This document shows, one piece after another, positions 20,048 to 61,862 of a DNA stretch of 64,000 nucleotides. Location of the stretch: positions 186,001-250,000 of the IMG/VR virus record IMGVR_UViG_3300020122_000238; one strand, given 5' to 3'. The first letter of the stretch is position 1. Each line of letters starts with the position of its first letter. Under the pieces are notes generated by a model, which saw nothing but the letters and a program-made list of their open reading frames with translations, did not search any database and had not been told where the DNA came from. A program made the translations under genes and the position numbers.

Positions 20048-20253
20048 ATTACCGTGCGACCACACATCTGTCGTTCGGGCCTGGGAGAAACCTACTCCTC
20101 AGAGTAGGTGAGACCACTTCTTCAGAAGTGGTCAGAAAACACCCCGCACTTCAAGGAGCCATTCGCCAGGGGTGGTTGGTGGAAGTCCCTGAAGTCTCGC
20201 ATGAGATATACCCCACCTGGCAAGCCCATTTACTTGCGGACGAGACCATCTGA
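20044..20253 (+). CDS. small paralogue 1 with C-terminal TW..LL-acidic tag
   Basis: MNYRAT...AIRQGWL...PTWQAHLLADETI. Confidence 0.7.
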   Translation: MNYRATTHLSFGPGRNLLLRVGETTSSEVVRKHPALQGAIRQGWLVEVPEVSHEIYPTWQAHLLADETI

Positions 20254-20255
20254 GC

Positions 20256-20444
20256 ATGCCGTATAGGGCGACCCGAGAATTCTACTACTCGCTGATGCTC
20301 GGCGACATCACGGTATACAAAGACGACATCGTATCGGACTGGGAAGTGAAAGAGTACAATCTGGAGGACGCCATCAAGCAGGGTTGGCTCATCTCATCCG
20401 AGCCCCCTACTTGGCAAGAGCGCTTGCTCGCGGACGACATATGA
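20256..20444 (+). CDS. small paralogue 2 with C-terminal tag
   Basis: MPYRAT...AIKQGWL...PTWQERLLADDI. Confidence 0.7.
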   Translation: MPYRATREFYYSLMLGDITVYKDDIVSDWEVKEYNLEDAIKQGWLISSEPPTWQERLLADDI

Positions 20445-20638
20445 AGTACCGCGCTTTGAGCCCGTTCATAATGGGTCCCTTCACAGACCCTTTATCGTTG
20501 AGCAAGGGGTCTGTGGTGAGCACAGAGGACTTCGCGAAGTACCCGTACCTGACGCATGCCCTGAAGCAGGGGTATCTGGAGGAAATCCCTGAGCCGAAGG
20601 TCTTGACATGGCACGACCACCTCATGGAAGACGACTGA
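20441..20638 (+). CDS. small paralogue 3 with C-terminal tag
   Basis: MKYRAL...ALKQGYL...LTWHDHLMEDD. Confidence 0.7.
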   Translation: MKYRALSPFIMGPFTDPLSLSKGSVVSTEDFAKYPYLTHALKQGYLEEIPEPKVLTWHDHLMEDD

Positions 20639-20645
20639 GGGTGCC

Positions 20646-21017
20646 ATGGCTGAAATCGACGACATGTGGGACCTCTTGCATACACCATCCCCAGCCCCTC
20701 CTCGAACCTCGGGCAAGATCGAACACATACAGTGCTTTCGAGGGCTTCGTTTGGAGCCTAAACCCCATCTCGTGCTTGGCACAACGATAGAAGGTCTCCG
20801 GTTTGCCATTGAAAAGCTCTGGTGGGAAATCGATGCTTTTTCCTTGGAGAAGGAAATCACAGGTCCCCTCCCCTGTCTGATCTATCCTCAGAAGCACTGG
20901 CAAGAGATTCAGCAAGAATTAGCCTACATACAAGCCTCTTTGAGCCAGGCATTTATTGGGACAATGGACTGCTTTGTCATTGATTGTTTCTACTTCCACT
21001 CTGCGGAAGACGTCTGA
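20646..21017 (+). CDS. hypothetical protein with acidic-W-Pro N-terminal segment
   Basis: starts MAEIDDMWDLLHTPSPAPP. Confidence 0.6.
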   Translation: MAEIDDMWDLLHTPSPAPPRTSGKIEHIQCFRGLRLEPKPHLVLGTTIEGLRFAIEKLWWEIDAFSLEKEITGPLPCLIYPQKHWQEIQQELAYIQASLSQAFIGTMDCFVIDCFYFHSAEDV

Positions 21018-21152
21018 AGCCGGGTCCTGTTTTGCGATCCCTCTGGGACCCTTTCCCGCATGTCAGAAGACGACGCTGACGCCTTCTATAGATCCTACAA
21101 AACTGAAGTCCTGCACACATCTGAAATTCTTCGCACAAAAGGTCTCTGGTAG

Positions 21153-21178
21153 TTGATCCGCGGACGAGTCGAGCTGTA
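21153..21178 (+). promoter_or_regulatory. class I motif TTGATC-N16-TGTA
   Basis: 12 nt upstream of ATG 21191. Confidence 0.75.
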
Positions 21179-21190
21179 TTGCTCCCCGCC

Positions 21191-22156: not shown

Positions 22157-22166
22157 TGGAGACCCC

Positions 22167-26861: not shown

Positions 26862-27106
26862 TCATGGGACGCCTGGTAGTTACCGTGAGGGGAGAATGCG
26901 AGCACCACAAGCGACGCGGACATCTACTGTGATGTCCGCGTCGCTTGTGGTGCAACGATCCTCCGCGTCGAGATGATAGGGGACTACCCCTCCACGGGCG
27001 CCCACATCTACGTGAAGTGCCAAAAATCTCCCGCCGAGCTGTCCGCGGCTATCGACGCTGCGGACGAGATCCCGCAATATTCAATCAGGACGGAAGTAGA
27101 GCGAAA

Positions 27107-28423
27107 ATGAGTAACGTAATCCTGATCGCGGGCCTCAACTACGGAGATGAGGGCAAGGGGACGACCGTCGACTACCTCGCTCGGAAGCACGAAGCGCACA
27201 CGGTCGTCCGCTACAACGGCGGAGCCCAAGCAGGCCATTCGGTGGTCCTGGAGGATGATCGGCACCACACCTTCGCCCAGTTCGGGAGCGCCACCTTCGT
27301 CCCTGGGGTGAAGACGCACCTCAGCCGGCACATGCTCATCAACCCGATCTTCATGATGTCTGAGGAGAAGCACCTCCGCACTGTCGGCGTCGAGGATGCC
27401 TTCGAACGGATGACCATCGAACGGGATGCGCTGATCACGACTCCCTACCATGTCGCCGCGAATCGCATCCGGGAGATGGCTCGCTCAAACCGCCACGGAT
27501 CTTGTGGGATGGGAATCGGCGAGACGGTGAGCAGTCACCTGTTCCACCCTCAAGAGGATCTCCGGATTGGGGATCTGGAAGGGCCAATCACCGCGCGATT
27601 GGAGCAGATCCGAGCGCGGTATTTGTGGGAGCTGGCTACTCTGCACATTCCCGAGTGCAAGTTCCGCGACTACGATTGCATCTGCCCGTTCAAGCATGAA
27701 TGGGGCATGCTCTTGAACAAGAGCCTTCTCCCCTTGATTGTGGGGTTGCTCACGGGATTTCTCAAGCTCCCGCTCAAGGTTGTCGATGAGACCTACCTCC
27801 CGCTCATCATGGGGGAAGGGACCACGATCTTCGAGGGTGCTCAGGGTGTCCTCCTTGATCAGGACTACGGGTTCCACCCCTACACGACCTGGTCCGACAC
27901 GACCTTCAGCAACGCCCTCAACCTGATCGAAGGCTTCTCTGGAGACGTAAGGAAGATCGGGATCGTTCGATCCTACATGACCCGGCACGGGGCGGGCCCA
28001 TTCGTCACGGAAGATGTCACCCTCCAGCTCCCCTCCACGAAGGTTGAGCACAACTCGCTCAATCCCTGGCAATCGAATTTCCGGGTGGGGCATTTCGACG
28101 CCTTCGCGACCAATTACGCCCTCAAGGTGATTGGGGGTGTCGACGAGATCGCCATGACACACTGCGATGTGCCAAGTAGTGGTAAAATTTGTGTTGGATA
28201 CAGGGGAGAGTTTACCCCCGAAGTGCTTCAGGATATGCCGCATGTGAAGCATATTCGTGAAGACCTCGACGTTCGTACGGGTATCACAAATGCTCTTTTC
28301 AATGTCTTTCCGGTGTACTTGACCGATGTGGCAGAGAAGGATTTCATCCCCAAAATTGAAGATTTCGTGGGGACTCCCATCACCATCAAGTCGTACGGCC
28401 CCACGGCCAAGGACAAGCGATAA
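27107..28423 (+). CDS. divergent adenylosuccinate synthetase (PurA)-like ligase
   Basis: GDEGKG, GGAQAGH, EGAQGVLLD, TRHGAGPF and SYGP are present; the aspartate-binding TTGRxR loop is replaced by HNSLNPWQSNFR. Confidence 0.85.
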   Translation: MSNVILIAGLNYGDEGKGTTVDYLARKHEAHTVVRYNGGAQAGHSVVLEDDRHHTFAQFGSATFVPGVKTHLSRHMLINPIFMMSEEKHLRTVGVEDAFERMTIERDALITTPYHVAANRIREMARSNRHGSCGMGIGETVSSHLFHPQEDLRIGDLEGPITARLEQIRARYLWELATLHIPECKFRDYDCICPFKHEWGMLLNKSLLPLIVGLLTGFLKLPLKVVDETYLPLIMGEGTTIFEGAQGVLLDQDYGFHPYTTWSDTTFSNALNLIEGFSGDVRKIGIVRSYMTRHGAGPFVTEDVTLQLPSTKVEHNSLNPWQSNFRVGHFDAFATNYALKVIGGVDEIAMTHCDVPSSGKICVGYRGEFTPEVLQDMPHVKHIREDLDVRTGITNALFNVFPVYLTDVAEKDFIPKIEDFVGTPITIKSYGPTAKDKR

Positions 28424-29337
28424 TGGACCCCATCAAGATCATCCTCCCGCCCACCAGGCCCAAGCACGCGACGAACGCGTGGGAAGCCCTCATGGCGGAT
28501 GATGATGGTATCCTTGAGGGTGATACCGCGACCTTCACCTTCGACACGAAGGTTGCGGAAGGGGACCTCTGCGACATCTACCGAGGCACCTACAACGGCC
28601 GCCCGGCGGCTTTGAAGGTGTCCCATGGGGTCGACGTCAACGACCTCGTCGAGCATGAGGCGGACGTCATCCGGCACCTCTTCCCCGCAGAAGAGGCGAA
28701 CGTCGGGTTCCTCCGCTACCTCTCCAAGCTCAGCTACTCCTTCCATGACGAACGGGAGGGAAAGCGGATCAACGTCTTCCCCTGGCTCGGAGAACATGTC
28801 TCCGTCGCCGACATCCTGAAGGCGTATCCAGGCGGCATCGAGTACCAAAACATGGTCTGGATGTTCAAGCGTGGACTGGAAGGCCTCGGATACGTTCACG
28901 AAAAGAACGTCATTCACGGTGCGGTCCTCCCCCCGCATCTGCTGATCCATCCGGCCGACCACGGGGCCAAGCTGATCGACTGGTCCTACGCCGTCCTCAA
29001 CGCGGACGCACGACGGAACAAGGTCCGGGCCATGTCCGCACCCTGGAGGTCCTTCTATGCCCCCGAGATTCCCGGGAAAGGGATCCCGACGGCGGCGACG
29101 GATATCTACATGCTGGCCAAGTGCATGGTCGCTCTGCAAGGCGGGGACGTCACCACGGACGCGATGCCGGATACGACCCCAGAGCCCATTCAGAGGTTCT
29201 TGAGGGAGTGCCTGTCTCCCATGCAGCACCTTCGGCCGAACAGCGCATGGGATCTCGTCGAGGAGTTCAACGCGCTTCTTCGCTCCGTGATCGGCCCGCC
29301 GAAATACTTCAAGTTCGAGATGTCCCCCAAGGTGTAA
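28423..29337 (+). CDS. Ser/Thr kinase-fold protein lacking the catalytic HRD Asp (pseudokinase-like)
   Basis: AALKV and EHE kept; HGAVLPPH replaces HRDLKPEN; DWS replaces DFG; coupled to the PurA-like gene. Confidence 0.75.
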   Translation: MDPIKIILPPTRPKHATNAWEALMADDDGILEGDTATFTFDTKVAEGDLCDIYRGTYNGRPAALKVSHGVDVNDLVEHEADVIRHLFPAEEANVGFLRYLSKLSYSFHDEREGKRINVFPWLGEHVSVADILKAYPGGIEYQNMVWMFKRGLEGLGYVHEKNVIHGAVLPPHLLIHPADHGAKLIDWSYAVLNADARRNKVRAMSAPWRSFYAPEIPGKGIPTAATDIYMLAKCMVALQGGDVTTDAMPDTTPEPIQRFLRECLSPMQHLRPNSAWDLVEEFNALLRSVIGPPKYFKFEMSPKV

Positions 29338-33213: not shown

Positions 33214-34029
33214 ATGTATGACGATGCCTCGCTGGACGATTACTGGGCCATGTTGCGGCCCCCCGAGCCCATGCCGTCCCCTGTGATCTCCCTTGAGACC
33301 GCTACCGAATGGCTGAAAACCATTGGGGCTCCGAGACATTCTCCCCTCTTGGTAGTCCCTGGTACATCTGTGGAGCGTTGCAGCGTTTTTCGGGCTCTGG
33401 GGAAAGTCGTGGACAGCACCTACTTCGAGTGCGACCTGGAAAACGCCTCCTGGTTAGAGGTGGGTCTCGACACGACCATCGCAGCTCTCGTCTCCTGTCA
33501 GGACCTCGATCTGGAGGGCACCATTCGAACGATGGCTGACACGTCCCATTACCTGGAGCATGACGTGTACCGGATTCTCTGGGAAATTCGGTTCTTGCGT
33601 CGTGAAGATCGGCATCAAGCGGACGAGCTGTTCGATATCTTCCGGCGATTGGTCCGTGACACACAACTTCGAGAACATGAGGTTCGGAGGCTCCGGGACC
33701 TTGGCATCTCGAAGTTCATCTTCTCTTTCCGGGAGAAAGTGGAAGTGCTGTGCTTCCTCCGCACCCTCGCCTCTCAGAACGAAATCCCGAGTCGCCTGGT
33801 TCTTTCTTTCGACGGGTTGGACCAGGCCATACAAGCTGAGAACAAGGGGGTTCTTCGCCAGCTCGTGATGCTCATCTCTGAAGTCCGACGTTGGACGCTA
33901 ATCACCAGTTGCCCGATTGGCATCCTCCTGGGTTTTTCAGCGGCCCGAAGTAATACCGCAAAACTCCGCAAGCTCAATCAGAATCTCACCGCCGAAATGG
34001 AGGCCGGGCTCGCCTGGACCAAGTCATGA
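33214..34029 (+). CDS. hypothetical protein with N-terminal acidic-YW-Pro tag
   Basis: MYDDASLDDYWAMLRPPEP; GGTGTA 10 nt upstream. Confidence 0.7.
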   Translation: MYDDASLDDYWAMLRPPEPMPSPVISLETATEWLKTIGAPRHSPLLVVPGTSVERCSVFRALGKVVDSTYFECDLENASWLEVGLDTTIAALVSCQDLDLEGTIRTMADTSHYLEHDVYRILWEIRFLRREDRHQADELFDIFRRLVRDTQLREHEVRRLRDLGISKFIFSFREKVEVLCFLRTLASQNEIPSRLVLSFDGLDQAIQAENKGVLRQLVMLISEVRRWTLITSCPIGILLGFSAARSNTAKLRKLNQNLTAEMEAGLAWTKS

Positions 34030-34535
34030 TCCGGATCAATTTCACTTGCGATGTTGTCGAACTCGAACCGCTCAACACTGACGAGTACGACGGCCTGCTC
34101 ATGGTGATCTCCACAGCCACCACCCCGATTGGAGGGAATGACCAGGTGAAACATCAGGATACGGCGACGGGGGAATGGGACGACATCCCTGTTTCTGCGG
34201 GGGCCCGCTCAACAGGGGGGTTGGTCTTCCGGGAGCGGCAAGTCACTCTGCCGGGGAAGTACCTGATCCGCTCCGCGATCCGCAATGGGAAAGAGCCCTT
34301 CAGGACTTTCGACCTCTTCCTCGAACATCTGGGAGACCGAAATGCCCGCCTCACGGTCGAGCCTGGAAGCACCCTTGCGTTCTGGATCATGGGCAACTTC
34401 GACCCGATCTTGATCGGTGCAGAGCGTACGATCATTCACATCGAGAATGGGCAAATCACGTTGATCGACACAGGGAAGCCGAGCGATCAGCGCCGTCCGA
34501 CCGCCTGGGAGAAAATGGACGACGACGACATCTAG
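34026..34535 (+). CDS. hypothetical protein with C-terminal tag
   Basis: ends PTAWEKMDDDDI. Confidence 0.7.
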   Translation: MIRINFTCDVVELEPLNTDEYDGLLMVISTATTPIGGNDQVKHQDTATGEWDDIPVSAGARSTGGLVFRERQVTLPGKYLIRSAIRNGKEPFRTFDLFLEHLGDRNARLTVEPGSTLAFWIMGNFDPILIGAERTIIHIENGQITLIDTGKPSDQRRPTAWEKMDDDDI

Positions 34536-34556: not shown

Positions 34557-35159
34557 ATGCCCCCTCGTCACCATCAACTAGACCCCCAAAGTGGAATGGG
34601 TATGAGCCCTCCGCACTGCCTCGTCTGTCGGGCCAGCTTCAACCCCAACGAGCCGCTCACCTCATGCGACCATATCTCGATCGACGACCTGAAGATCCAG
34701 ACAGTCTACGACATCGACATGGACGAGAAGCCCATCGGCATGGGGCTCTCGGGGGAGTGCTTCAACCTGAAGTGCCCCGACTGCAAGCAGACCTTCATGC
34801 AGCTCCGCAAGTCCATGCACGGGCTCTTCTATGGGTGCCCTTCCTACCCCGCGTGCAAGGGCACTCACGGGGCCAATGCGGACGGCGCTCCGAAGGGCAT
34901 CCCTGGAGACTTCGCGACCCGTCAGGCCCGTATAGCGGTTCACCTGGTCTTCGATCGTATATGGAATCAACCTGGCTCCAACCTGACCCGAATCCAGGCC
35001 TATACCTGGATGGCTTGGGAAATGAGGCTGGGAATCATGGAAGCCCATATCGCACGCTTCGACATTGAAATGTGCGAGAAGCTCGTCTCCCTGGTGAAAA
35101 AACACTTCGGGGTCACGAACGCGTGGGAAGCCATCCTCGACGACTCCATCTGGGATTGA
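34557..35159 (+). CDS. zinc-finger protein (topoisomerase Zn-ribbon/DUF3268-like) with C-terminal tag
   Basis: CPDC...FYGCPSYPAC.GTHGA..DG.P.G.P...TRQAR..VH..FD.IW; ends TNAWEAILDDSIWD. Confidence 0.75.
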   Translation: MPPRHHQLDPQSGMGMSPPHCLVCRASFNPNEPLTSCDHISIDDLKIQTVYDIDMDEKPIGMGLSGECFNLKCPDCKQTFMQLRKSMHGLFYGCPSYPACKGTHGANADGAPKGIPGDFATRQARIAVHLVFDRIWNQPGSNLTRIQAYTWMAWEMRLGIMEAHIARFDIEMCEKLVSLVKKHFGVTNAWEAILDDSIWD

Positions 35160-39994: not shown

Positions 39995-40027
39995 ACTGAG
40001 GATCTTCCTAAAAAAACCCTATACACG

Positions 40028-47709: not shown

Positions 47710-48009
47710 TCAGAAGTCTTCGTCTTCTTTTAGCAACCGCTCATGCCACGTCCGAATTTTTTGAGCCCGAAGTCTGGCGAGGGGGCTAGGAAACAGAACA
47801 TCATACCCACGCAACTCACTCCGGAATGGCCCTCTGTAGCCTTCTTTGAAGATGACACGAATTCTAAATGAGTCCCTCGTAAAAATGGACTCCAACACGG
47901 CTTCAACCATCGAATCAGAACGGAAAAGAGAGACAATATGACGGAAACGAGTTTTCTCCTCAATCGTGAAGGTAGGGAACTCCAAGTCCCAAACGACTTG
48001 ATTAGACAT
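47710..48009 (-). CDS. hypothetical protein with C-terminal tag (AT-richer)
   Basis: ends RTWHERLLKEDEDF. Confidence 0.65.
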   Translation of the reverse strand: MSNQVVWDLEFPTFTIEEKTRFRHIVSLFRSDSMVEAVLESIFTRDSFRIRVIFKEGYRGPFRSELRGYDVLFPSPLARLRAQKIRTWHERLLKEDEDF

Positions 48010-48010: not shown

Positions 48011-48406
48011 TCAGTCCTCCAGGATGGCATCCCAAACCGTGGGACCCTTCAAAGAATGAAACTGGTTGATAAAGTTTACCCATGAAGTAATTCGGAATTG
48101 TCTTGAATCATCGTGACTATAAGACAGCCAGCCATTTTTGATGGTCATAACGGAGACCATGTTTTTAAAATGTGTGGGATCCTTGTCTACAAAAACGGCG
48201 TCATGGTGTACCCAATGAGGAACGGGGGTGCCTTCATATTTCGGATGGAAAGGCGACCAAAAACGCTCAACTCTCTCAAGAGAAGTACATCCTGGTCGAC
48301 TCTCCCCCACGGCCAAAAGCCAGAGCCCATTGTCCGAGAAAGCCACGACCTCCGCCCAATACCCGGGCCCCTCAAGTTCCAACCAATCCCCAATTTCGTA
48401 GGCCAT
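48011..48406 (-). CDS. hypothetical protein with C-terminal tag (AT-richer)
   Basis: MAYEIGDW... ends PTVWDAILED; GGTGTA (48416-48421) 9 nt upstream. Confidence 0.65.
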   Translation of the reverse strand: MAYEIGDWLELEGPGYWAEVVAFSDNGLWLLAVGESRPGCTSLERVERFWSPFHPKYEGTPVPHWVHHDAVFVDKDPTHFKNMVSVMTIKNGWLSYSHDDSRQFRITSWVNFINQFHSLKGPTVWDAILED

Positions 48407-49348: not shown

Positions 49349-49684
49349 CTACGATGCTCTTGAGCCATTCGACCGCGGAATCAACAGCGGGCAAACCCGG
49401 CGGGCGTGGTGGAAAGCCACGCCATTTTCTCTAGAACTCCTCGTCGAGCCTCTCCCACCCCGTGAGATACGGGAGTTTCGGTGGGGTGAGTGGCGGGGTT
49501 CAGGATTGGAGCAAGGCTCCACAAGAATCGAACCTACCCCGATTGGGAAGTAGGTTGCTATCTCCTTCGAACAACGCGTGCAGATGTAGAAGTGCTTTGC
49601 CCAAAGCCCAATCGCACCGGACTCAACCTGAGTCCGGTGCGATTGGGGGCAAAAGAGGTGCCCAGCGTTATACGTCGTCGCCAT
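49349..49684 (-). CDS. possible Zn-ribbon protein containing an internal palindrome
   Basis: FCPQ...YICTRC; overlaps the stop of the upstream gene. Confidence 0.4.
   Translation of the reverse strand: MATTYNAGHLFCPQSHRTQVESGAIGLWAKHFYICTRCSKEIATYFPIGVGSILVEPCSNPEPRHSPHRNSRISRGGRGSTRSSRENGVAFHHARRVCPLLIPRSNGSRAS
49607..49647. repeat. perfect 19-bp inverted repeat
   Basis: CCCAATCGCACCGGACTCA-ACC-TGAGTCCGGTGCGATTGGG. Confidence 0.9.
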
Positions 49685-50033
49685 CAAGATGCTCCCAAAC
49701 CGTGGGGTTGGTCTCTGGCAGCTTCGGTTGAGCTTGCGCCATCGGGGGCAGAGTTGTTCTCAGAACGAGGCTCAGAAGCTCTGAATCACCCCGCGGTCGA
49801 GCTTGTGCCTGAAGCTGGGCTCGTAGCTCCCTGCGTTCTCGGATGATCCTCTCCAGGACCTCGACGGAGTTCTCGTCGCTGTCTTCCGCGTACCTTTGCA
49901 GACGTTCCGTGAGCTGCTTGAGGAGGACTGCATCTTCAGACTCCGTGTGAACGTAGGCAAGGAGCTTGCCTACGCCAATTGCTATCGCAATGAGCAGCAC
50001 CGCGAGACCAAGGGTAACAATGAAAGCGATCAT
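49668..50033 (-). CDS. membrane-anchored coiled-coil protein with C-terminal tag
   Basis: N-terminal TM; ends PTVWEHLDGDDV. Confidence 0.7.
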   Translation of the reverse strand: MIAFIVTLGLAVLLIAIAIGVGKLLAYVHTESEDAVLLKQLTERLQRYAEDSDENSVEVLERIIRERRELRAQLQAQARPRGDSELLSLVLRTTLPPMAQAQPKLPETNPTVWEHLDGDDV

Positions 50034-50422
50034 CCGATCTCCTCTTCATCCGAGAGCAAGGCCGCAGCTCCCGCCGGTTGCGGGGGAGGAGTAGGTTCTT
50101 CAAACACATCTCCTCCCGCCCAGACCACTTCACCCCCACGAGTACAAATATAGCCAAAGCAAGAGGCCTTAAGCCCCCTCACGATTTCCCGAGTGTCATC
50201 GAGAACCTGACTGTGAGGTGGCGTCTCGTTGCCATCCTTGAAGGTTGTCCCTGTCCCCCCCACAGTCAGAGACAGGAGAGCAGAGTACTTGGTGTTCTGC
50301 GAGAGCTTCTTGGTTGATGCGAGGGCGCCCACTGTATACCCTTTGGCCACCAATCCCGCAATAATGCGAGGGATGTGCATCTCGGATATGAGGGTCACCC
50401 AAAGTCGACACGTAGCTTCCAT
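50030..50422 (-). CDS. hypothetical protein
   Basis: 130 aa; ends ALLSDEEEIG; ATGA coupling. Confidence 0.6.
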   Translation of the reverse strand: MEATCRLWVTLISEMHIPRIIAGLVAKGYTVGALASTKKLSQNTKYSALLSLTVGGTGTTFKDGNETPPHSQVLDDTREIVRGLKASCFGYICTRGGEVVWAGGDVFEEPTPPPQPAGAAALLSDEEEIG

Positions 50423-55114: not shown

Positions 55115-55687
55115 ATGTTGACGAAGAAGATCCTGACGGCGACGAAGCATTACCTGAGCAAGACCCCCGAAGAGAACCGCGCCTATGGCCTGGTTACGGA
55201 TGGGAAGATCAACCCCGGCACCTTCCGCTTCATGCCGGTGCTGGCGTGGCTTCGCAAGAAGCCCGAGAGGAGCAGGATTGTCCTCTCGGGCTTCTTGCTG
55301 CGCATGACGGAAGGTGCTTTCGTGGGAGGCCTCGACTGGTCCATCCCGCTGAACCCGGAAACCGAGAACGACGCCGCGAACCTTCTCTCGTCCTTCGGGT
55401 GGGACAATCGAGTGTGGCCTTCAGACCCGGGCTGGCCCGACGATCTGCCGGATGAGGAACACACGCTGCACGGGATGCTCAAGAAGAAGGGCATCTTGGA
55501 GACGCTCACGTTCCCGCCGAAGGAATCGGGCAACAGGGTGATGACGCTTCATGTGCTGAAGGTGTCGAACCCCTTCCCGCTGCCGATCCTGGTTGCTGAT
55601 GAAGACCGTCAGGAGGTGGCCCCCGAGATGCTCTCGAAACTTCGAGAGCTGGTCGCCGACCCGAGCTGCTTCTCGCTGTCCTCCTAG
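55115..55687 (+). CDS. hypothetical protein
   Basis: 190 aa; GGTGTA (55099-55104) 10 nt upstream. Confidence 0.75.
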   Translation: MLTKKILTATKHYLSKTPEENRAYGLVTDGKINPGTFRFMPVLAWLRKKPERSRIVLSGFLLRMTEGAFVGGLDWSIPLNPETENDAANLLSSFGWDNRVWPSDPGWPDDLPDEEHTLHGMLKKKGILETLTFPPKESGNRVMTLHVLKVSNPFPLPILVADEDRQEVAPEMLSKLRELVADPSCFSLSS

Positions 55688-56277
55688 TCGTCCGCGAGAA
55701 GGTGCCCCCACGCGTTGTCAGGTCTACCTTTGGGCCCTCTCGTCCGAAGCAACCTGACAATGGGGAGATCGGCTGCCGCAGCCAGGGAATCATCCAGCTC
55801 CCTGGTTGCGATGGAGCACTGGTCGATGTGGTGCGCGGGATTTGAGATGTCCCGCACCGTGATGAGCCACACCCCCTTCTTCTTCTGAATGTAGACCCCA
55901 GCCCGCCAGGTGTTCATGACCTTCGTGTTGGGGTCTTGGGCTCCCGTGGCGACATCGAATGGCTCTGGGATCAAAGCCATCGTGTTCTCCGTCTCACGGT
56001 AGAGATGTTTCCCGAAGGGCCGTCGCGTGTACTCCGTGCTGATCTGGTTCAGCGGAATTTGAGTCTCATGGCAGACAGTATCCCACCGCGTAAGAATTCC
56101 CCCAGGCACGAGAGTGGTGATTGGCCCTGTAGTTCTTGACCCGTGGGGGGTCGTCAGGTCAGGCCGCCAGGTCACGATCCCATCAACCTCGGAGGTCTTC
56201 AGCGATCGAATCACAACATGACCGGGGCACATGTCCCCCAAAATCATGACAGGCTTCTGCATCAGGACAAGGATCAT
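55684..56277 (-). CDS. hypothetical protein with C-terminal tag
   Basis: ends DNAWGHLLADD; GGTGTA 10 nt upstream. Confidence 0.65.
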   Translation of the reverse strand: MILVLMQKPVMILGDMCPGHVVIRSLKTSEVDGIVTWRPDLTTPHGSRTTGPITTLVPGGILTRWDTVCHETQIPLNQISTEYTRRPFGKHLYRETENTMALIPEPFDVATGAQDPNTKVMNTWRAGVYIQKKKGVWLITVRDISNPAHHIDQCSIATRELDDSLAAAADLPIVRLLRTRGPKGRPDNAWGHLLADD

Positions 56278-56287
56278 CTTGAGGATC

Positions 56288-56301
56288 TACACCGCGGTGT
56301 A
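56288..56301. promoter_or_regulatory. palindromic back-to-back pair of class II motifs
   Basis: TACACCGCGGTGTA; ATGs at 56277 (-) and 56312 (+), each 10 nt away. Confidence 0.75.
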
Positions 56302-56311
56302 CTCTAGCGAC

Positions 56312-57031
56312 ATGGGATCGACCCCCAAAAAGACCCCTGTGAAGTACCACTCCTGGTGGACCGAGAAAGCCGTACCTCATCGGAACATGTTGATGGTGAG
56401 GTACGACTACGGGCACTCCAGGGTCGATAGATCCTTGTACGGATGTCTGGTCGTCGGAGACGACCAGACGCTCCTCTGGCTCAGCAGTGAGGAGATCCGG
56501 GAAAAGTGGAAGCCCTTCCGCGTACCCTTCTCGGCAGTTATTCCTCTGGGGGTGTGGCCCCAGTGGGTGACTCGACGAGATGTCCAATGGCACACAGCGC
56601 CAGACCATCCTCGGCGAATGACCATCGTCTCGTACAAGCCCAAGAGCTTCTGGCTTGCAACCACCACCGTGGTCGAGCCCTTCGAGGGCCCAAGATTCCA
56701 AGTCTACAGAGCAACGCAGAGTTTCAAGGTTGATCACGAGATGGTGCAATACGGGGACCATCTCACCCTCGATAGAGACTACAACGTGTGGACCGTGCGT
56801 AAGAAGAGCATCGCTCGGTTCTGCAACCGGGAGATCACAGCCTTCCTTGCTATGCAATACCTCATCCCCGTGATTCAACCGAGCGGGATGCCCTTCGATT
56901 GGAGCATTCAGAAGTTCACCACACGCTTCTGGAGTCTCCACACTTTCGCTCAGAACCATCGGCCTCTGATGCCCTCAAAACCGACCGCTTGGGACGTTGT
57001 GATGGCCGACGAATTCGAGGAAATGGTGTAG
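56312..57031 (+). CDS. hypothetical protein with C-terminal tag
   Basis: ends PTAWDVVMADEFEEMV. Confidence 0.7.
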   Translation: MGSTPKKTPVKYHSWWTEKAVPHRNMLMVRYDYGHSRVDRSLYGCLVVGDDQTLLWLSSEEIREKWKPFRVPFSAVIPLGVWPQWVTRRDVQWHTAPDHPRRMTIVSYKPKSFWLATTTVVEPFEGPRFQVYRATQSFKVDHEMVQYGDHLTLDRDYNVWTVRKKSIARFCNREITAFLAMQYLIPVIQPSGMPFDWSIQKFTTRFWSLHTFAQNHRPLMPSKPTAWDVVMADEFEEMV

Positions 57032-57040: not shown

Positions 57041-57586
57041 ATGGGAATCCTCGATCGTGTTGTGCGTCGCGTCTGTGAAAAAGTCTCCAAGTGGGCCCCT
57101 TCGTGGCGCATGATCACCCGAGGTGACAACGAGCCCTACCTGAAGAGGTACTACTTCTTCAGGCGTGAATGGGTTCTGGAATGGTTCGAGACTCAGGGTT
57201 GGGAGACCCCGAGGTTCGTGGCCAAGATCCCCTCGCTCTACCTTCACCATTTCGTGGCGGGGGATGATGAGGTCGAGCTGCACAACCATCCCTTCAAGAA
57301 GAGCCTCGCCCTCGTTCTGACGGGCGGGTATCACGAGGAACGTAAGGTGGGGAACGAGGTCCACAGCCGGATCGTCCCGCCCTGGTCCTTCAACCTCATC
57401 GACGCCAATACCTTCCACAAGGTGGAACTCCTCGACAAGGAGAAGGGCGCCTGGACCATCTTCCTTTCGGGAGAGCGTACCCAGCGCTGGGGTTTTTGGC
57501 ATCCGGAGACGTTCGAGTACGTCGACTGGGAAAACCATGTGGACGCCCGCCCCAACCCCGAGGCAAGGCTTCACCATGCCCCCTAG
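57041..57586 (+). CDS. cupin-like protein
   Basis: LYLHHF...D..LHNHPF..SLALVL.GGY.E...FHKV...WTIF. Confidence 0.65.
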   Translation: MGILDRVVRRVCEKVSKWAPSWRMITRGDNEPYLKRYYFFRREWVLEWFETQGWETPRFVAKIPSLYLHHFVAGDDEVELHNHPFKKSLALVLTGGYHEERKVGNEVHSRIVPPWSFNLIDANTFHKVELLDKEKGAWTIFLSGERTQRWGFWHPETFEYVDWENHVDARPNPEARLHHAP

Positions 57587-57908
57587 AATGTGGGCTGGGG
57601 GGCCCCTCTACCCTGACTGGTTGGTCATCAACCAACTCGTTGAGACGACGGCAAGACACCCAGGGATACGACAACAATCAGTCATTACCAGGATCACTGA
57701 CGGGTTGGTGTACGTCCGATCAAATACCGGCATCGGAGATATTTGGTATCGAGCAGAGCACTTCGTGGACGAATGGCGGGTGCTTCATACCCCCCTGAAG
57801 AACGATCTCGCTCCCGAGGACTACAGGTGGGAGCCCAAGCCTGTCGAGCCCCCCAAGCCCGCTCCGACGTGGCATGAGCTCCTCATTGACGATGACTTCG
57901 ACATCTAG
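57576..57908 (+). CDS. hypothetical protein with C-terminal tag
   Basis: ends PTWHELLIDDDFDI. Confidence 0.7.
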   Translation: MPPRMWAGGPLYPDWLVINQLVETTARHPGIRQQSVITRITDGLVYVRSNTGIGDIWYRAEHFVDEWRVLHTPLKNDLAPEDYRWEPKPVEPPKPAPTWHELLIDDDFDI

Positions 57909-57933
57909 TCGAAGTCATCGTCAATGAGGAGCT
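57877..57933. repeat. perfect 26-bp inverted repeat formed by the 3' ends of two convergent genes
   Basis: AGCTCCTCATTGACGATGACTTCGAC-ATCTA-GTCGAAGTCATCGTCAATGAGGAGCT. Confidence 0.95.
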
Positions 57934-58621
57934 GCTCCCAGGCAGTGGGCCAGAAGATGTGGACCCTGGGGGTGGCCGGAGGGGGAGGGGGCTGCGTCGG
58001 CACCCCGGGAAGGTACCTCCCCATCAGAGAGGGGGTCTCGGTCGGATCGAACTCCGGGACTTCAACTCGACGTCGCATGTTTTCCAAAGCCCGCGTGTTG
58101 AAGACCATGTCCCCAACGTGTTCGTGAGCCGTTAACCCCTCGCCGGAAATCCGATCCATGGCGTCGAAGACCCGCTGGTCCTCTTCCTCTCGAAGACGCT
58201 CTTGCGCGAACATCTCTCGTGTCCTCACAACATCCTGCCACACAGTATTAGGGGCAACCTGCACGAAGGAGGGCGTAAACTCCTCTCGGAAAACCGAGTA
58301 CCTGGGGTCAGGAGAGGGTTCTCCAATCCCGTAGACGTTGCGGAACGTTTCTTGGGAGACGCACAGATCCACGTGGACCATACGCTCCATGATCTCCATT
58401 TCCTCCGATAGGTTGAGGGATGAGGGCAGCAAAGGAAGCAACTGTATGGGGGGTGCCGGTAGGATGGGGAGCGCCGGTAGGACCGGTAGGATGGGGAGCG
58501 CCGGTAGGACCGGTAGGAGCCCCATCCTCCTGATCACTTCATTCGCACGCTCACGTATGTCTTGGAGCACCAGATGCTCCAGAACTCGCCGGATGAGAGG
58601 GACACCATCACGAGGGGGCAT
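57905..58621 (-). CDS. hypothetical Pro-rich protein with C-terminal tag
   Basis: ends PTAWEQLLIDDDFD; GGTGTA (58631-58636) 9 nt upstream. Confidence 0.65.
   Translation of the reverse strand: MPPRDGVPLIRRVLEHLVLQDIRERANEVIRRMGLLPVLPALPILPVLPALPILPAPPIQLLPLLPSSLNLSEEMEIMERMVHVDLCVSQETFRNVYGIGEPSPDPRYSVFREEFTPSFVQVAPNTVWQDVVRTREMFAQERLREEEDQRVFDAMDRISGEGLTAHEHVGDMVFNTRALENMRRRVEVPEFDPTETPSLMGRYLPGVPTQPPPPPATPRVHIFWPTAWEQLLIDDDFD
58456..58518. repeat. 27-bp tandem repeat (about 2.3 copies) encoding LPx repeats
   Basis: unit CCGGTAGGATGGGGAGCGCCGGTAGGA. Confidence 0.85.
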
Positions 58622-59223: not shown

Positions 59224-59649
59224 ATGAGCGAAGACCTGTATGATTTGGACAGCTATTGGGAGTTGAGGGTTCTACCTCCTCGGCCTCCCGAACCTGAGAT
59301 CGAAGCAGCGCCAGAACCCATTCAAGAACTCACTTTCACTCCGAGGGGAGTGTACTTGGGCCTATTCACAGCCCTACCCCAAGACACCAATGAGGGTGTG
59401 GAGCTTACCGATACCAGATACGCTCGCGCATCTGTGAATCCCAGATTCACATCAAACAGTAGGGGGGAATCGGTAGCTGAGATCACACACCGATTCCCCC
59501 CTATGAGCACTCCCGTGGTTGTGATGGGTGGGGGTCTTTGGGATGCCCCTGTGGGGGGCAATCTCCTCTACTTTTCAAGCCTAGCCGTGAATCTCCGCGT
59601 CGACCTCGGAATGAACGCGGAGATTCACCTCACCGTCTCTGCTGACTAG
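59224..59649 (+). CDS. tail-fibre-associated-like protein with N-terminal acidic-YW-Pro tag
   Basis: VYLGLFTALP...YARA...LWDAPVGGNLLY resembles a small family often annotated as phage tail fibre protein. Confidence 0.65.
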   Translation: MSEDLYDLDSYWELRVLPPRPPEPEIEAAPEPIQELTFTPRGVYLGLFTALPQDTNEGVELTDTRYARASVNPRFTSNSRGESVAEITHRFPPMSTPVVVMGGGLWDAPVGGNLLYFSSLAVNLRVDLGMNAEIHLTVSAD

Positions 59650-60035
59650 AGCTGTACCTTCACCTGAGCGTAAGCGAGCGCATCGGCCCAGCCCTCTTCG
59701 GAGGCGGGAAAGCGAGCGGAAGGACCCGGGGCCTCCGTGGCGTCACGAGAAGCCTTCTTAGGGTCTCGGAAGTGCGGGTCGATGGTCCGCCAGCGCATCG
59801 CATTCAGAGACGAGACGCCCAGATAGACGAGGACCTTCACCCCCTCGTAACTGCATGTCTTGCAGTTGGGGTAGGACACCTTGATGACGAGGTGCCGTCC
59901 AACCGCAACTGCGTCCACGATTGTGTAGTTCTTGGCGTCGGGTGTCTTGGGCACGGAGGAGTAGCTTTCGTAGGGGTCTCTGTAGTCCTTGTGGCTGCTA
60001 CAGCTCGGGTCATTGGCGCTGTGTCGACAGGTCAT
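59646..60035 (-). CDS. hypothetical phage-type protein
   Basis: NY.IV...G..LVIKVSYPNC..YEG.KVLVY...DPHF...ARF...GW. Confidence 0.7.
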   Translation of the reverse strand: MTCRHSANDPSCSSHKDYRDPYESYSSVPKTPDAKNYTIVDAVAVGRHLVIKVSYPNCKTCSYEGVKVLVYLGVSSLNAMRWRTIDPHFRDPKKASRDATEAPGPSARFPASEEGWADALAYAQVKVQL

Positions 60036-60059
60036 GGGCTCTCTTCAAGGGTAAGACGT

Positions 60060-60299
60060 TTAGACGTAACGTGGATCCCGCAAGTACGGAAACAGCTCTT
60101 GCATCGAACCAGGCTTGGCCGGAGGGAACCCTTCACCATCCGGCACCCCCAGCATCTTGCTGAAGTTCGGCTCGCCCGTTTCAGCCGCCATATCATTCAG
60201 GGTATCGGCGAAAGACGCTGCCAGATCCTCCGGAAGATCGGGGTTGGCGTCGATGGCCTTTTGTTCTGCGGGCGTCCAGTTCGTCGTCTTCATCGTCAC
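60060..60299 (-). CDS. hypothetical protein
   Basis: 79 aa coupled to the upstream gene. Confidence 0.6.
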   Translation of the reverse strand: MTMKTTNWTPAEQKAIDANPDLPEDLAASFADTLNDMAAETGEPNFSKMLGVPDGEGFPPAKPGSMQELFPYLRDPRYV

Positions 60300-61429
60300 T
60301 TCGCCGTGTTGCGCAGCTCGGTCGAGCTGATGTCCCAGCGGCCCGGGACGTCCTTGAACAGAAAGACAAGGATGTCGACGACATCCTTGTGGGCGTAGAT
60401 GATGTCACTGCCCGTCTTGTACTCACCCTTGACGAGCCGACCGAGCACGTAAAAGCGCGTGCAGTGGGCCGAGAACTCCTCCAGCAAGGGCGCGACTTCG
60501 ATGCCCCACTTGGGGTCGAGCATCGTCGCCAGGGTGTCCGCCCCGAGCACGAAGGCAGCACCCGGGAAGGCCTTCGCCTTGTCGAGGAAGAGCGGGTCGT
60601 TCTCCGACAAGAGGTAGTTACGCCCTCGCATCCCAGCCACCCGTTGCAACAGCTCCGGGACCGTGACAGGCGTCTTGTGGACCGGGTTGATGGTGGTCAT
60701 GTGGACCAACGTCTGGTAGAACCTGTAGGCGAGAAGATGCGCTTCCCGGCCCCCCTTCTCGTGCCCATCATGGAAGGGATTGAAGCTCCCCGGGTAGATA
60801 AGGGTCGTCAGGGGGTTGATGTCCGCAGCCGTTCCGCGCGTCCCATCCGCCTTGAAGTAGGGGTGAGCGAAGAGACGAGCCCGCGCTTTGTCCATGGCCT
60901 CGATGGGCTCGAACTTCACCCCGAGGATGTCGGGGTCGACCGGGAGGCCCATCGCTCGCGAGAGGATGTTCAACCCCATCGAATCGGCGATCATCCCGTC
61001 CACCGTGCGCTGCTCCCAGCCCACTCCTTTGGGGATGACAGCGGAGGCGATGTAGCAGCCCCCATCACCGAAGGCCGCGACGAAGATCCGGTGATCTCCC
61101 CGGTGCTCCCGAGTCGAAGCGACCGAAGCAGCGAGGCCAATCCCGATTGCCTTCGAGCCAGGCTTCACGGCCCGGAGGTACGCGGTCATGGCGAGGTCGA
61201 GCGCGATGTTCTCGTCGCAGTACTTCTCGGGGATGAATCCGAGATGGCGCGCGGTGGCCTCGGGCTCGTACGGGAAGCACGCTTCGATGAAGAAGTTAGA
61301 AATGCCCGGAGGAGCCCAGAGGCGGGACTGGACCCCTGCTCCGGCCCCCGTGGCGATGACGACGACCCGTGGAGCGTCAGCCCCAAGGTCGCGGAGGATT
61401 TCGATGTTGCGTGTGGTGTTGGTGCTCAT
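60296..61429 (-). CDS. CinA-like domain fused to a nicotinamide-nucleotide adenylyltransferase (NMNAT)-like domain
   Basis: YPGSFNPFHDGH (HxGH), FVLGADT, DISSTELR; N-terminal TGAG...GIGLAASVAS...RGDHRIFVA. Confidence 0.75.
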   Translation of the reverse strand: MSTNTTRNIEILRDLGADAPRVVVIATGAGAGVQSRLWAPPGISNFFIEACFPYEPEATARHLGFIPEKYCDENIALDLAMTAYLRAVKPGSKAIGIGLAASVASTREHRGDHRIFVAAFGDGGCYIASAVIPKGVGWEQRTVDGMIADSMGLNILSRAMGLPVDPDILGVKFEPIEAMDKARARLFAHPYFKADGTRGTAADINPLTTLIYPGSFNPFHDGHEKGGREAHLLAYRFYQTLVHMTTINPVHKTPVTVPELLQRVAGMRGRNYLLSENDPLFLDKAKAFPGAAFVLGADTLATMLDPKWGIEVAPLLEEFSAHCTRFYVLGRLVKGEYKTGSDIIYAHKDVVDILVFLFKDVPGRWDISSTELRNTAK

Positions 61430-61440
61430 GTTGTCGGCTC

Positions 61441-61466
61441 TACAAGACGAGAAAGCCACGGATCAA
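61441..61466 (-). promoter_or_regulatory. class I motif TTGATC-N16-TGTA
   Basis: 11 nt upstream of ATG 61429. Confidence 0.75.
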
Positions 61467-61583
61467 CCAGGATTCTCTTCGGGGTTGTGGGTCCCCACAG
61501 AGATCGGACCAGTGGCGTCGATGTAGCATAGCCTAACCTTCCAGGGCTTCCTTCTCCCGAAGGACATGGTGCTTTGGGGCACC

Positions 61584-61862
61584 TTAAAAATCGTCGTCTT
61601 CCAAGAGGAAGGCCACATGTGGGGGAGGCAGAAGCCGTAACCGACTCACGAGCACGCCTGCATGTGTCGTCTCCCCATACTGAAGATCCAGGGGGCATAC
61701 AGTGACCCACCCCTTCTGGAAATGATACCCGGGAGTGGAGTTGTCGCGCACTCCCGAAATCAATCGAACTTTTCTCCCCTGCCAACTATAACCCAAGCGA
61801 CCTTCGACGATGTATATCTCGGGAGAAAAGTTGGCACGTGGTTGAGGACAGTCTTCGCTCAT
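61584..61862 (-). CDS. hypothetical protein with variant acidic tail
   Basis: ATGA coupling; ends HVAFLLEDDDF. Confidence 0.5.
   Translation of the reverse strand: MSEDCPQPRANFSPEIYIVEGRLGYSWQGRKVRLISGVRDNSTPGYHFQKGWVTVCPLDLQYGETTHAGVLVSRLRLLPPPHVAFLLEDDDF

What the first reader, a model, noticed from the sequence alone, without database searches (positions are those of the whole stretch)
20200..61620. A shared C-terminal peptide tag ([TN]-W..LL-acidic) on at least 15 mostly unrelated proteins: candidate sorting or docking system
Seen: these ORF ends carry one motif: PTWQAHLLADETI (20253), PTWQERLLADDI (20444), LTWHDHLMEDD (20638), PTAWEKMDDDDI (34535), TNAWEAILDDSIWD (35159), TTWHSKLLDDGDD (38211), SNAWAKILEDDL (45647), RTWHERLLKEDEDF (47710), PTVWDAILED (48011), PTVWEHLDGDDV (49668), LTAWEQLDDLG (54797), DNAWGHLLADD (55684), PTAWDVVMADEFEEMV (57031), PTWHELLIDDDFDI (57908), PTAWEQLLIDDDFD (57905). 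Looser variants end ORFs 10937, 42308, 50030 and 61584. Anchored on T/N (position 0), Trp is at +1 or +2, a hydrophobic residue is at +5 (usually +6 too), and Asp/Glu follow. This is the pattern of an N-capped amphipathic helix with an acidic tail. Apart from one paralogous triplet, the carriers are unrelated (Zn finger, membrane coiled coils, beta proteins) and occur in both GC-rich and AT-rich genes. Codons vary, so selection appears to act on the peptide. The recognisable metabolic enzymes (NadV, NrtR, NMNAT, GT51, PurA-like) lack it. Established analogues are short terminal motifs that dock many clients on one hub, such as T4 gp45 clamp-binding C-termini, the SSB acidic tail and capsid-targeting sequences. 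Inference: a portable address label routing a client set to one hub (virion packaging/ejection, a phage compartment, a chaperone or protease, or a host complex). I know of no described system with this consensus.
Basis: partly seen in the sequence, partly recalled or inferred. Interest (0 to 1): 0.92.

Follow-up and report, generated by a model that had tools for sequence, protein, structure and literature searches.

The report
Shared Trp-acidic docking tag, huge phage
About one in six genes in this stretch of an uncultivated 275-kb soil phage ends in the same short tryptophan, di-leucine and acidic peptide; the peptide is conserved across a whole clade of such phages and looks like an undescribed address or docking label whose receptor is still unknown.

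Summary
All 15 listed ORF ends carry the motif. I found one more C-terminal copy, two N-terminal copies, and conserved variants with F/Y or without W.

- **Enrichment:** 17 ORFs carry a terminal tag against 0.66 expected from shuffles.
- **Peptide-level selection:** codons vary. Tag residues are 93% identical to 84-91% relatives, against 65% for the adjoining linker.
- **Deep conservation:** in one family, 36 of 38 members (21-60% identity) keep the tag behind a variable linker.
- **Distribution:** a DNA pattern for PTAW[DE]xhhxD[DE] is terminal in 5 of 7 viral hits and about 22 of 52 metagenome hits. It is terminal in about 2 of 26 hits in 596 Gb of cellular genomes.
- **Where it is absent:** 638 kb of structural modules from related phages, and a distant 485-kb relative.
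- **Kinase family:** the tag sits N-terminally or in a loop, and alternates with a J domain.

Best reading: a portable N-capped amphipathic acidic helix on a flexible tether that docks non-structural proteins to one conserved receptor. The receptor is not identified. Candidates are the phage's very conserved actin-like protein, its vWA proteins, and a chaperone. Capsid targeting, a degron and membrane binding are disfavoured. No matching system was found in the literature or the PDB.

The parts
20044..20253 (+). Carrier 1 of a paralogous triplet (69 aa), tail PTWQAHLLADETI
   Evidence: tail conserved in L002/L003
20256..20444 (+). Carrier 2 of the triplet (62 aa), tail PTWQERLLADDI
20441..20638 (+). 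Carrier 3 of the triplet (65 aa), tail LTWHDHLMEDD; the linker diverges in relatives while the tag stays identical
34026..34535 (+). Beta-rich protein (169 aa), tail PTAWEKMDDDDI; the genes at the same syntenic position in L051/L093 (no significant sequence match) end in TAWERILEDDD / PTAWDRLGDLDD
34602..35159 (+). Zn-ribbon (Top1-type) + DUF3268 protein (185 aa), tail TNAWEAILDDSIWD; orthologues at 49-55% identity keep a tag
37747..38211 (+). N-terminal TM + coiled coil + basic Pro/Lys linker + tag TTWHSKLLDDGDD, followed by 8 residues
45165..45647 (+). Member of a conserved alpha/beta family (160 aa), tail SNAWAKILEDDL; 36 of 38 aligned family members carry the tag
47710..48009 (-). Small AT-richer protein (99 aa), tail RTWHERLLKEDEDF
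48011..48406 (-). Protein of about 131 aa (start inferred), tail PTVWDAILED
49668..50033 (-). N-terminal TM + coiled coil protein (121 aa), tail PTVWEHLDGDDV; the next gene's ATG lies inside the tag-coding DNA
49431..49690 (-). Small CxxC protein whose tag TGWERLDEEF is out of frame with the body in this window; an intact ORF (about 86 aa from the Met) ends in TWWERLDEDF in L011
54237..54797 (+). 186-aa protein, tail LTAWEQLDDLG
55684..56277 (-). 197-aa protein, tail DNAWGHLLADD
56279..57031 (+). 250-aa protein (JGI start), tail PTAWDVVMADEFEEMV; the last codons overlap a GGTGTA site
57537..57908 (+). Small ORF (start uncertain, not called by JGI), tail PTWHELLIDDDFDI
57905..58621 (-). 238-aa Pro-rich protein, tail PTAWEQLLIDDDFD; convergent with the previous ORF
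41499..42308 (+). Zn-ribbon + long disordered protein (269 aa), F variant PTAFEVLQRPFLEDDD; orthologues end in PTAWERLISDD, PTAYDRIQKGFLDDD, PTAYDRLLDEDP
10578..10937 (+). W-less variant TPFGKALLDDEIG, conserved in L003 while the linker diverges
50030..50422 (-). W-less variant AGAAALLSDEEEIG, identical in L011 although the body is only 32% identical
61584..61862 (-). Possible variant VAFLLEDDDF; not verified in relatives
28423..29337 (+). Ser/Thr kinase with an N-terminal copy of the tag (TNAWEALMADDDG, coded at 28474-28512); 42 of 120 homologues carry a tag and 55 carry a J domain instead
45877..46302 (+). 141-aa protein with the tag at its N-terminus (MSTTAWDLILNDFDE), conserved in L011/L012

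Best explanation
The tag is a short linear docking motif. It has a helix N-cap residue (T, less often S, N or D, usually after Pro or Arg), then Trp (rarely Tyr or Phe) one or two residues later. Two hydrophobic residues at cap+5 and cap+6 and a run of Asp/Glu follow. Consensus: [RP][PRK]-T-A-W-[DE]-R-L-L-[DE]-D-D, with a median of 9 residues after W.

The tag hangs on a variable Pro/Lys/Arg-rich linker at the end of otherwise unrelated non-structural proteins. These include winged-helix and Zn-ribbon DNA binders, a Ser/Thr kinase, membrane-anchored coiled coils and many orphans.

Inferred mechanism: the two- to three-turn amphipathic helix puts W and LL into a hydrophobic groove flanked by basic residues on one very conserved receptor. 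This tethers the whole client set to the same place or machine during infection.

Shown: the motif exists, is selected as a peptide, is portable and works at either terminus or in a loop, and spans a clade.

Inferred: the helix-in-groove binding and the single receptor.

Unknown: the receptor. My ranked candidates are the phage's own ultra-conserved MreB/BeeR-like actin homologue, a chaperone system (because the tag alternates with a J domain), the two phage vWA proteins, and a host protein.
For: - Terminal enrichment is 17 against 0.66 expected. Outside controls stay near background.
- Synonymous codon variation.
- The tag is 93% conserved, against 65% for the linker and 66% for the body, in 84-91% relatives; Fisher p 1e-8 to 1e-10.
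- 36 of 38 members of the 45165 family (21-60% identity) keep the tag behind a linker of variable length. The tag's Trp is one of only four columns conserved at 90% or more.
- AlphaFold2 gives a confident domain (pLDDT above 90), a low-confidence linker, and a short helix at the tag, residues 151-158.
- Orthologues at 30-55% identity in L051, L086 and L093 retain tags.
- The pattern scan is terminal in 5 of 7 viral hits and about 22 of 52 metagenome hits, against about 2 of 26 cellular hits.
- Longer tagged loci carry several tagged genes.
- The cap residues T, S, N and D are exactly the good helix N-caps (established helix-capping preferences).
- The tag also occurs N-terminally and in a loop of the kinase N-lobe, and is mutually exclusive with an N-terminal J domain in 120 homologues.
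- Carriers are unrelated to each other.
Against: - No binding partner has been shown or modelled, because no multimer prediction was available.
- One receptor is an assumption. The TW, TxW and W-less ALL-acidic classes could have different partners.
- The predicted tag helix has only moderate confidence (pLDDT about 63).
- The actin-like candidate also occurs in a distant relative that has no tags. The one tagged gene next to it is not conserved there.
- Acidic tails on DNA-binding proteins can act within the same molecule.
Confidence: 0.6

Rival explanations
1. Sorting signal in the strict sense: the tag is read by a translocation or import machine that moves clients into a phage-built compartment or structure, rather than simply tethering them.
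For: DNA-binding proteins, an SNF2 helicase (internal copy) and the kinase carry the tag, while metabolic enzymes do not. About 10-25% of accessory genes are tagged.
Against: No shell, importer or translocase gene was recognised in the roughly 125 kb of this genome that I read. In known nucleus-forming phages, import does not use terminal signals (PMC12908238). Membrane-anchored carriers fit tethering better than transport.
Confidence: 0.15
2. Autoinhibitory or DNA-mimic tail: the acidic helix folds back on the carrier's own basic or DNA-binding surface, as in HMGB1, T4 gp32 and T7 gp2.5, with no common partner.
For: Several carriers are Zn-ribbon or winged-helix proteins with basic linkers.
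Against: The same precise consensus, including the cap residue and Trp, occurs on unrelated folds, membrane proteins and a kinase. This is hard to explain by many independent self-interactions. AlphaFold2 does not give the tag high confidence, as packing on its own domain would.
Confidence: 0.08
3. Degradation or stability signal read by a host or phage protease to time the removal of early proteins.
For: It is a terminal, exposed, conserved peptide on many non-structural proteins.
Against: Known bacterial C-terminal degrons are non-polar (ssrA LAA), and the DD variant is the standard non-degradable control (established knowledge). The tag also works at N-termini and in a loop. No protease gene was seen in the regions read.
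Confidence: 0.07
4. Capsid-targeting or virion-packaging signal, as in T4 internal proteins or encapsulin cargo peptides.
For: There is precedent for short targeting peptides on cargo of HK97-fold shells.
Against: I found 1 true tag in 638 kb of structural modules from 36 related contigs, against 16 in this 64-kb accessory window. Carriers include integral membrane proteins. The consensus is unlike known cargo peptides.
Confidence: 0.05
5. Membrane-binding amphipathic helix, nascent-peptide or termination effect, or a by-product of a DNA element at gene ends.
For: It is an amphipathic helix. Gene ends overlap downstream starts and GGTGTA sites. One convergent pair forms a 26-bp hairpin.
Against: The net acidic charge argues against binding anionic membranes. 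The tag is already present on TM proteins. N-terminal and loop copies argue against a termination effect. Codons vary and the motif survives at 21-60% protein identity.
Confidence: 0.03

Closest known systems
Sliding-clamp-binding tails (bacterial QL[SD]LF; the T4 gp45-binding C-termini of gp43, gp33 and gp55) and the SSB C-terminal tail DDDIPF
   Same: A short hydrophobic-plus-acidic peptide at the end of a flexible tail docks several unrelated proteins on one hub.
   Different: The consensus differs: there is no Gln-Leu-x-Leu-Phe and no Ile-Pro-Phe-COOH. Here the clients, not the hub, carry the acidic tail. The number of carriers is far larger. A clamp or SSB partner has not been shown.
SspB C-terminal ClpX-binding peptide and the chemoreceptor NWETF pentapeptide that docks CheR/CheB
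   Same: The anatomy is the same: a folded domain, a long variable linker and a short conserved terminal peptide that acts purely as a tether. NWETF also has an N-W-E core.
   Different: Those peptides sit on one protein family each. SspB's is basic, and NWETF is five residues long and ends in Phe-COOH. Here the peptide is a helix of about 11 residues with an acidic run on many families.
Amphipathic helices that bind actin-family proteins (ParR C-terminal helix with ParM, FtsZ C-terminal peptide with FtsA or ZipA, WH2 motifs with actin)
   Same: Many unrelated proteins use a short terminal amphipathic helix on a linker to bind one very conserved cytoskeletal protein. DNA-binding adaptors and membrane anchors are typical clients. 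This phage encodes an MreB/BeeR-like protein that is 70-85% identical across the clade.
   Different: There is no sequence similarity to those motifs. Binding is untested. The actin-like gene lies in the structural module and also occurs in a relative without tags.
Ku-binding motif of APLF, CYREN and WRN (basic patch, then L-P-[ST]-W-[ML]-L) bound by the Ku80 vWA domain
   Same: A basic linker followed by P-T/S-W and hydrophobic residues, at the termini of unrelated proteins, with a vWA domain as receptor. Two vWA proteins are encoded in the window.
   Different: That system is eukaryotic, has no acidic run and has different spacing. The resemblance is recalled from memory and was not tested.
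J domain (Hsp70-recruiting module)
   Same: In the orthologous kinase family the tag and a J domain occupy the same accessory position and exclude each other. Both behave as add-on partner-recruitment modules.
   Different: A J domain is a folded four-helix domain of about 70 residues with an HPD loop, and the tag is an 11-residue peptide. No J domain was found in the tag-bearing genome regions. Whether the partner is the same is unknown.
C-terminal translocation signals (Dot/Icm E-block), encapsulin cargo peptides and the T4 capsid targeting sequence
   Same: A shared terminal label on many unrelated proteins, which is Glu-rich in Dot/Icm effectors.
   Different: No secretion or shell context was found. 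The tag has a much sharper consensus than the E-block and is absent from structural modules.

Membership tests
SSB C-terminal tail (SSB-Ct) | Extreme C-terminus D-D-D-[IL]-P-F-COOH on an OB-fold ssDNA-binding protein | tested here: not met
   In the profile of 93 tails no Pro-Phe terminus appears and Trp is invariant. Carriers have no OB-fold or SSB Pfam hits.
Beta-clamp / gp45 clamp-binding motif | Q-L-[SD]-L-F type pentapeptide (or the T4 S-L-D-F-L type), usually on replication or repair proteins | tested here: not met
   The consensus T-x-W-[DE]-R-L-L-acidic has no Gln and no Leu-Phe. Carriers are not replication enzymes.
ssrA-like / ClpX C-terminal degron | Non-polar C-terminal residues (L-A-A-COOH or similar) | tested here: not met
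   Tails end in Asp/Glu runs, and copies also occur at N-termini and in loops.
Capsid-targeting / encapsulin cargo peptide | Carried by proteins packaged in the shell, typically encoded in or beside the structural module | tested here: not met
   One true tag was found in 638 kb around the structural block of 36 related contigs, against 16 in the 64-kb window. Packaging itself is not testable here.
Membrane-targeting amphipathic helix (MinD/FtsA type) | An amphipathic helix with basic and hydrophobic faces that binds anionic lipid | tested here: not met
   The tag is net acidic, with D/E at W+1 and W+5 to W+8, and is present on proteins that already have a TM segment.
ParMRC-like adaptor tail / actin-cleft binder | A small DNA-binding adaptor encoded next to the actin-like ATPase, with its terminal helix binding the ATPase | tested here: inconclusive
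   In this genome an 84-aa tagged Zn-ribbon gene directly follows the actin-like gene. It is absent at that position in L099, L100 and L101. Binding is not testable with these tools.
J-domain proteins | A four-helix domain with an HPD loop | tested here: not met
   No J-like HPD context occurs in the window or in the 40 kb of the same contig that I scanned. J domains occur only in kinase homologues that lack the tag.
Generic short linear motif (SLiM) for docking | Short, in a disordered or flexible context, conserved more than its flanks, found convergently on unrelated proteins, and independent of position | tested here: met
   Flanks diverge while the motif is kept. There is a low-pLDDT linker. 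Carriers are unrelated. The motif occupies C-terminal, N-terminal and loop positions. The partner, which is the last defining feature, is not testable here.

The most novel reading that the evidence does not exclude
The tag is the address label of a virus-encoded client-recruitment system. It would be a WH2-like or NLS-like peptide by which a clade of soil huge phages attaches 10-25% of its accessory proteome to a phage-built intracellular structure. That proteome includes transcription factors, a kinase and membrane anchors. The most concrete candidate structure is the filament of the phage's own MreB/BeeR-like actin, the most conserved gene I saw in the clade. In sister lineages a J domain would take the tag's place on the same kinase.
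Probability: 0.18. Interest if true: 0.95.

Novelty: new variant of a known kind. Interest (0 to 1): 0.8.

Why it matters
Shared terminal docking peptides organise replisomes, chemoreceptor arrays, proteolysis and protein shells. None has been described that marks such a large and varied part of a phage proteome.

If this tag recruits clients to one receptor, it gives three things:
- It groups dozens of orphan huge-phage genes into one functional set.
- It offers a handle of about 11 residues for pull-downs, localisation and structure prediction, which could reveal a hub in phages that cannot be cultured.
- It could serve as a portable tag for synthetic recruitment.

The alternation with a J domain on an orthologous kinase suggests that huge phages repeatedly evolve ways to wire their own proteins to a central machine.

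Tried and rejected
- Megablast of 25 kb against cultured phages found no match.
- Pfam and PHROGs on ten carriers gave only the Zn-ribbon/DUF3268 hit.
- The word-based homologue search on the Zn-finger carrier found only itself and one close relative.
With alignment A2 it found only close relatives.
- A stricter DNA pattern, TAW[DE]RLL[DE]D[DE], gave 0 hits in IMG/VR. The clade is therefore poorly represented there.
- The PDB profile search with the tail alignment gave only a chance collagen hit. A literature string search for tag peptides found nothing relevant, and general literature searches found no description.
- Foldseek of the 45165-family model found no significant fold match.
- Host mimicry: the cellular-genome scan gave almost only internal, helicase motif-II-like or chance hits. 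The single Chitinophaga and actinobacterial DUF4192 terminal hits look incidental.
- The idea that the actin-like gene and a tagged adaptor form a conserved ParMR-like pair was rejected as a general rule, because the small gene is specific to this genome.
- The idea that Thr is a phospho-acceptor was set aside. The allowed residues T, S, N and D match helix N-caps, and Asn cannot be phosphorylated or mimic phosphate.
- The first exact-protein look-up failed because the start codon was wrong.

Full report
**Source and setting.** The window is positions 186001-250000 of a 275,300-bp JGI/IMG-VR contig (Ga0210602_10499276 = IMGVR_UViG_3300020122_000238) with GC 58.7%. Close relatives at 84-91% protein identity are contigs of 350 kb and 128 kb. 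No cultured phage matches at the DNA level.
- GT51 transglycosylase (11832-13505)
- dNMP kinase-like protein (18050-19558)
- NrtR (21440-22156)
- NadV (22056-23552)
- PurA-like protein (26945-28423)
- Ser/Thr kinase (28423-29337)
- 2H/Acb1-like phosphoesterase (39791-41065)
- NMNAT-like protein (60296-61459)
- two vWA proteins (8944-10074 and 14883-17477)

None of the enzymes ends in the motif.

Every one of the 15 listed ORF ends carries the stated tail. I added three kinds of copy:
- A sixteenth canonical tail at 49431-49463(-). In this window it is out of frame with its small CxxC gene body, but the gene is intact in relative L011.
- Two N-terminal copies, in the kinase and in 45877-46302.
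- Conserved variants. The 42308 family carries W, Y or F in different genomes. The tails at 10937 and 50030 lack Trp but are kept unchanged in relatives whose protein bodies have diverged to 32% identity.

A six-frame count gives 17 tagged ORFs of at least 60 aa. Residue shuffles give 0.66 (maximum 3) and reversed sequences give 0. Hits are terminal far more often than chance, with p of about 1e-8. The same expression gives 7 hits, of which one is real, in 638 kb of structural-module DNA from 36 contigs of the same clade. It gives 2 hits in 199 kb of bacterial loci and 16 in the window. A 485-kb distant relative has no canonical tag. In the JGI gene calls, which are independent of mine, about 10 of 104 genes in the sampled parts of this genome are tagged.

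**Selection acts on the peptide, not the DNA.** Codons for Thr, Leu and Asp differ freely among tags. Between the window and its 84-91% relatives, tag residues are 93% identical. The 15 residues just upstream are 65% identical and the rest of the carriers 66% (Fisher p 1e-8 to 1e-10). With the tags removed, only the triplet at 20.0-20.6 kb shows any mutual similarity.

**The tag persists over deep divergence.** A full HMMER search with the family of 45165-45647 found 48 representative proteins. 36 of the 38 alignable full-length members, at 21-60% identity, end in the tag behind a linker of variable length and composition. The other two end within or just before the acidic run. The tag's Trp is one of only four columns conserved at 90% or more. 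AlphaFold2 on that alignment gives a confident alpha/beta domain (pLDDT above 90), a low-confidence linker, and a short helix exactly at the tag. The fold has no significant PDB neighbour. Orthologues of the Zn-ribbon carrier, the membrane coiled-coil carrier and the 42308 family in loci at 30-55% identity also keep tags, and the genes at the syntenic position of the beta-rich protein are tagged too.

**Consensus.** From 93 distinct tails the profile is [RP][PRK]-T-A-W-[DE]-R-L-L-[DE]-D-D, followed by an end, D, or a hydrophobic residue. There is a median of nine residues after Trp. The cap position takes T, S, N or D, which are the residues preferred at helix N-caps. Aligned on the cap, the two hydrophobic residues stay at +5 and +6, while Trp sits at +1 or +2.

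**Distribution.** I scanned three collections with a DNA pattern for P-T-A-W-[DE]-x-h-h-x-D-[DE].
- In IMG/VR it hit seven places. Five were followed by a stop within a few codons, and all five lie on huge contigs: this one three times, a 437-kb contig and a 252-kb contig.
- In 596 Gb of bacterial and archaeal genomes it hit 26 places. Only about two were near a stop, and the rest were internal, many of them helicase motif II.
- In metagenome contigs it hit 52 places. About 22 were terminal, came from soil, peat and rhizosphere samples, and had GC 0.56-0.67. The longer of these loci carry two or three tagged genes and are syntenic with the window.

The tag is therefore a property of a clade of uncultivated huge phages and not a widespread host motif. 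A more distant huge phage, LR745208, shares few genes with the window. It has none of the carriers and no tags.

**What kinds of protein carry it.**
- Small winged-helix (MarR-like) proteins.
- Several Zn-ribbon proteins, including one with a Top1-type ribbon plus DUF3268.
- Two or three proteins with an N-terminal TM segment, a coiled coil and a basic linker. By the positive-inside rule their tag should face the cytoplasm; this is my inference.
- An SNF2 helicase with an internal copy.
- The kinase.
- Many orphans.

Structural modules are essentially free of tags.

**The kinase family is the most informative.** Among the 120 best homologues of the window's kinase, 42 carry the tag. It sits either at the N-terminus or inserted after the first strands of the N-lobe, and often with F in place of W. 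Another 55 carry an N-terminal module with an HPD motif whose best, and mostly only, Pfam match is the DnaJ J domain. That match held in 8 of 8 tested, with one above the curated threshold. The two modules never truly co-occur. In a 434-kb genome with the J-domain kinase, the syntenic region has no canonical tag in 23 genes. The tag-bearing genome regions have no J-like motif. So the tag is independent of position and is exchangeable in evolution with a module whose only known job is to recruit a partner, Hsp70 (established knowledge; phage example cited in PMC12619734).

**Mechanism.** I conclude that the tag is a docking motif: a tethered amphipathic acidic helix recognised by a conserved receptor with a hydrophobic pocket and a basic rim. 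The receptor is not identified.

*Candidate 1, the actin homologue.* It lies elsewhere on the same contig (L098 8957-9994, Pfam Volactin). Its AlphaFold model, of moderate quality, is closest to the BeeR filament protein and MreB. It has 1880 homologues, and the top 120 are 70-85% identical on contigs up to 434 kb. It is the most conserved gene of its block, at 70-73% against 53-60% for the large neighbours. Actin-family proteins are classic receptors for terminal amphipathic helices (ParR-ParM, FtsZ-FtsA, WH2-actin; established knowledge). DNA-binding adaptors and membrane anchors are the expected clients. Against this, the only tagged gene next to it is specific to this genome, and the gene also exists in a relative without tags.

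*Candidate 2, a chaperone system,* suggested by the J-domain alternation.

*Candidate 3, the vWA proteins,* by analogy with the Ku-binding motif. That resemblance is from memory and untested.

**Rivals.** A strict import or sorting signal remains possible, but no compartment genes were seen. Known phage nuclei do not use terminal signals (PMC12908238). Capsid targeting, ClpX-type degrons, membrane binding, termination effects and a DNA artefact each conflict with at least one result above.

**Novelty.** No paper in the searchable library contains these peptide strings or describes such a motif. No PDB chain matches the tail profile. The kind of thing, a shared terminal docking peptide, is known. 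This consensus, its scale (about one gene in six in this window) and its host clade are new.

Noticed in passing
window-wide, e.g. 3945, 8928, 11814, 45146, 55099, 57025, 58647 (+); 56293, 58636, 63194 (-): The hexamer GGTGTA occurs 57 times against 10.7 expected. 40 of the 57 copies are followed within 3-30 nt by the start of an ORF of at least 50 codons (random positions give 20.6), with a sharp mode at a spacing of 9-11 nt. No classical Shine-Dalgarno sequence is evident. It is probably a phage promoter, a TSS-proximal element or a translation-initiation element, and it overlaps the last codons of some upstream genes.
   Followed up: partly
window 57877-57934: The tag-coding ends of two convergent genes form a perfect 26-bp stem with a 5-nt loop (RNA fold -52 kcal/mol). 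It may be a bidirectional terminator or a trace of an inverted duplication.
   Followed up: partly
window 49431-49690 (-): The body of a small CxxC gene and its tag are in different frames here, but form one ORF in relative L011. This is a frameshift, which could be a sequencing error, a pseudogene or recoding. Its ATG lies inside the tag-coding DNA of the upstream gene.
   Followed up: partly
L098 8957-9994 (same contig, position about 63.8-64.8 kb): An MreB/BeeR-like actin homologue (Pfam Volactin) sits inside the conserved structural block. It is 70-85% identical across more than 100 huge-phage contigs and is the most conserved gene of that block.
   Followed up: partly
P0176-P0290 (homologues of window 28423-29337); L150 10001-11194: Many huge-phage Ser/Thr kinases are fused to a divergent N-terminal J domain (HPD motif). 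They occur on contigs up to 760 kb.
   Followed up: partly
window 8944-10074 and 14883-17477: Two vWA (MIDAS-motif) proteins. The 864-aa one has very high GC3 (0.92) and is 30% identical to vWA proteins of Ackermannviridae and Aeromonas phages.
   Followed up: partly
window 39791-41065; L098 2414-3322; L092 6056-7036: Likely counter-defence and NAD-related genes: a 2H/Acb1-like phosphoesterase, an Acb2/Tad1-hairpin protein and an ADP-ribosyl glycohydrolase. They add to the NrtR-NadV-NMNAT set in the window.
   Followed up: no
window 43401-45109: An Endonuclease_7/HNH gene and two reverse-strand genes separate a gene pair (42754-43215 and 45165-45647) that is adjacent and translationally coupled in relatives L051, L093 and L095.
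   Followed up: partly
window 50499-51665 (-): A 388-aa protein ends in a long Ser/Asp repeat with a terminal Trp. It lies directly upstream of a run of five tagged genes on the same strand.
   Followed up: no
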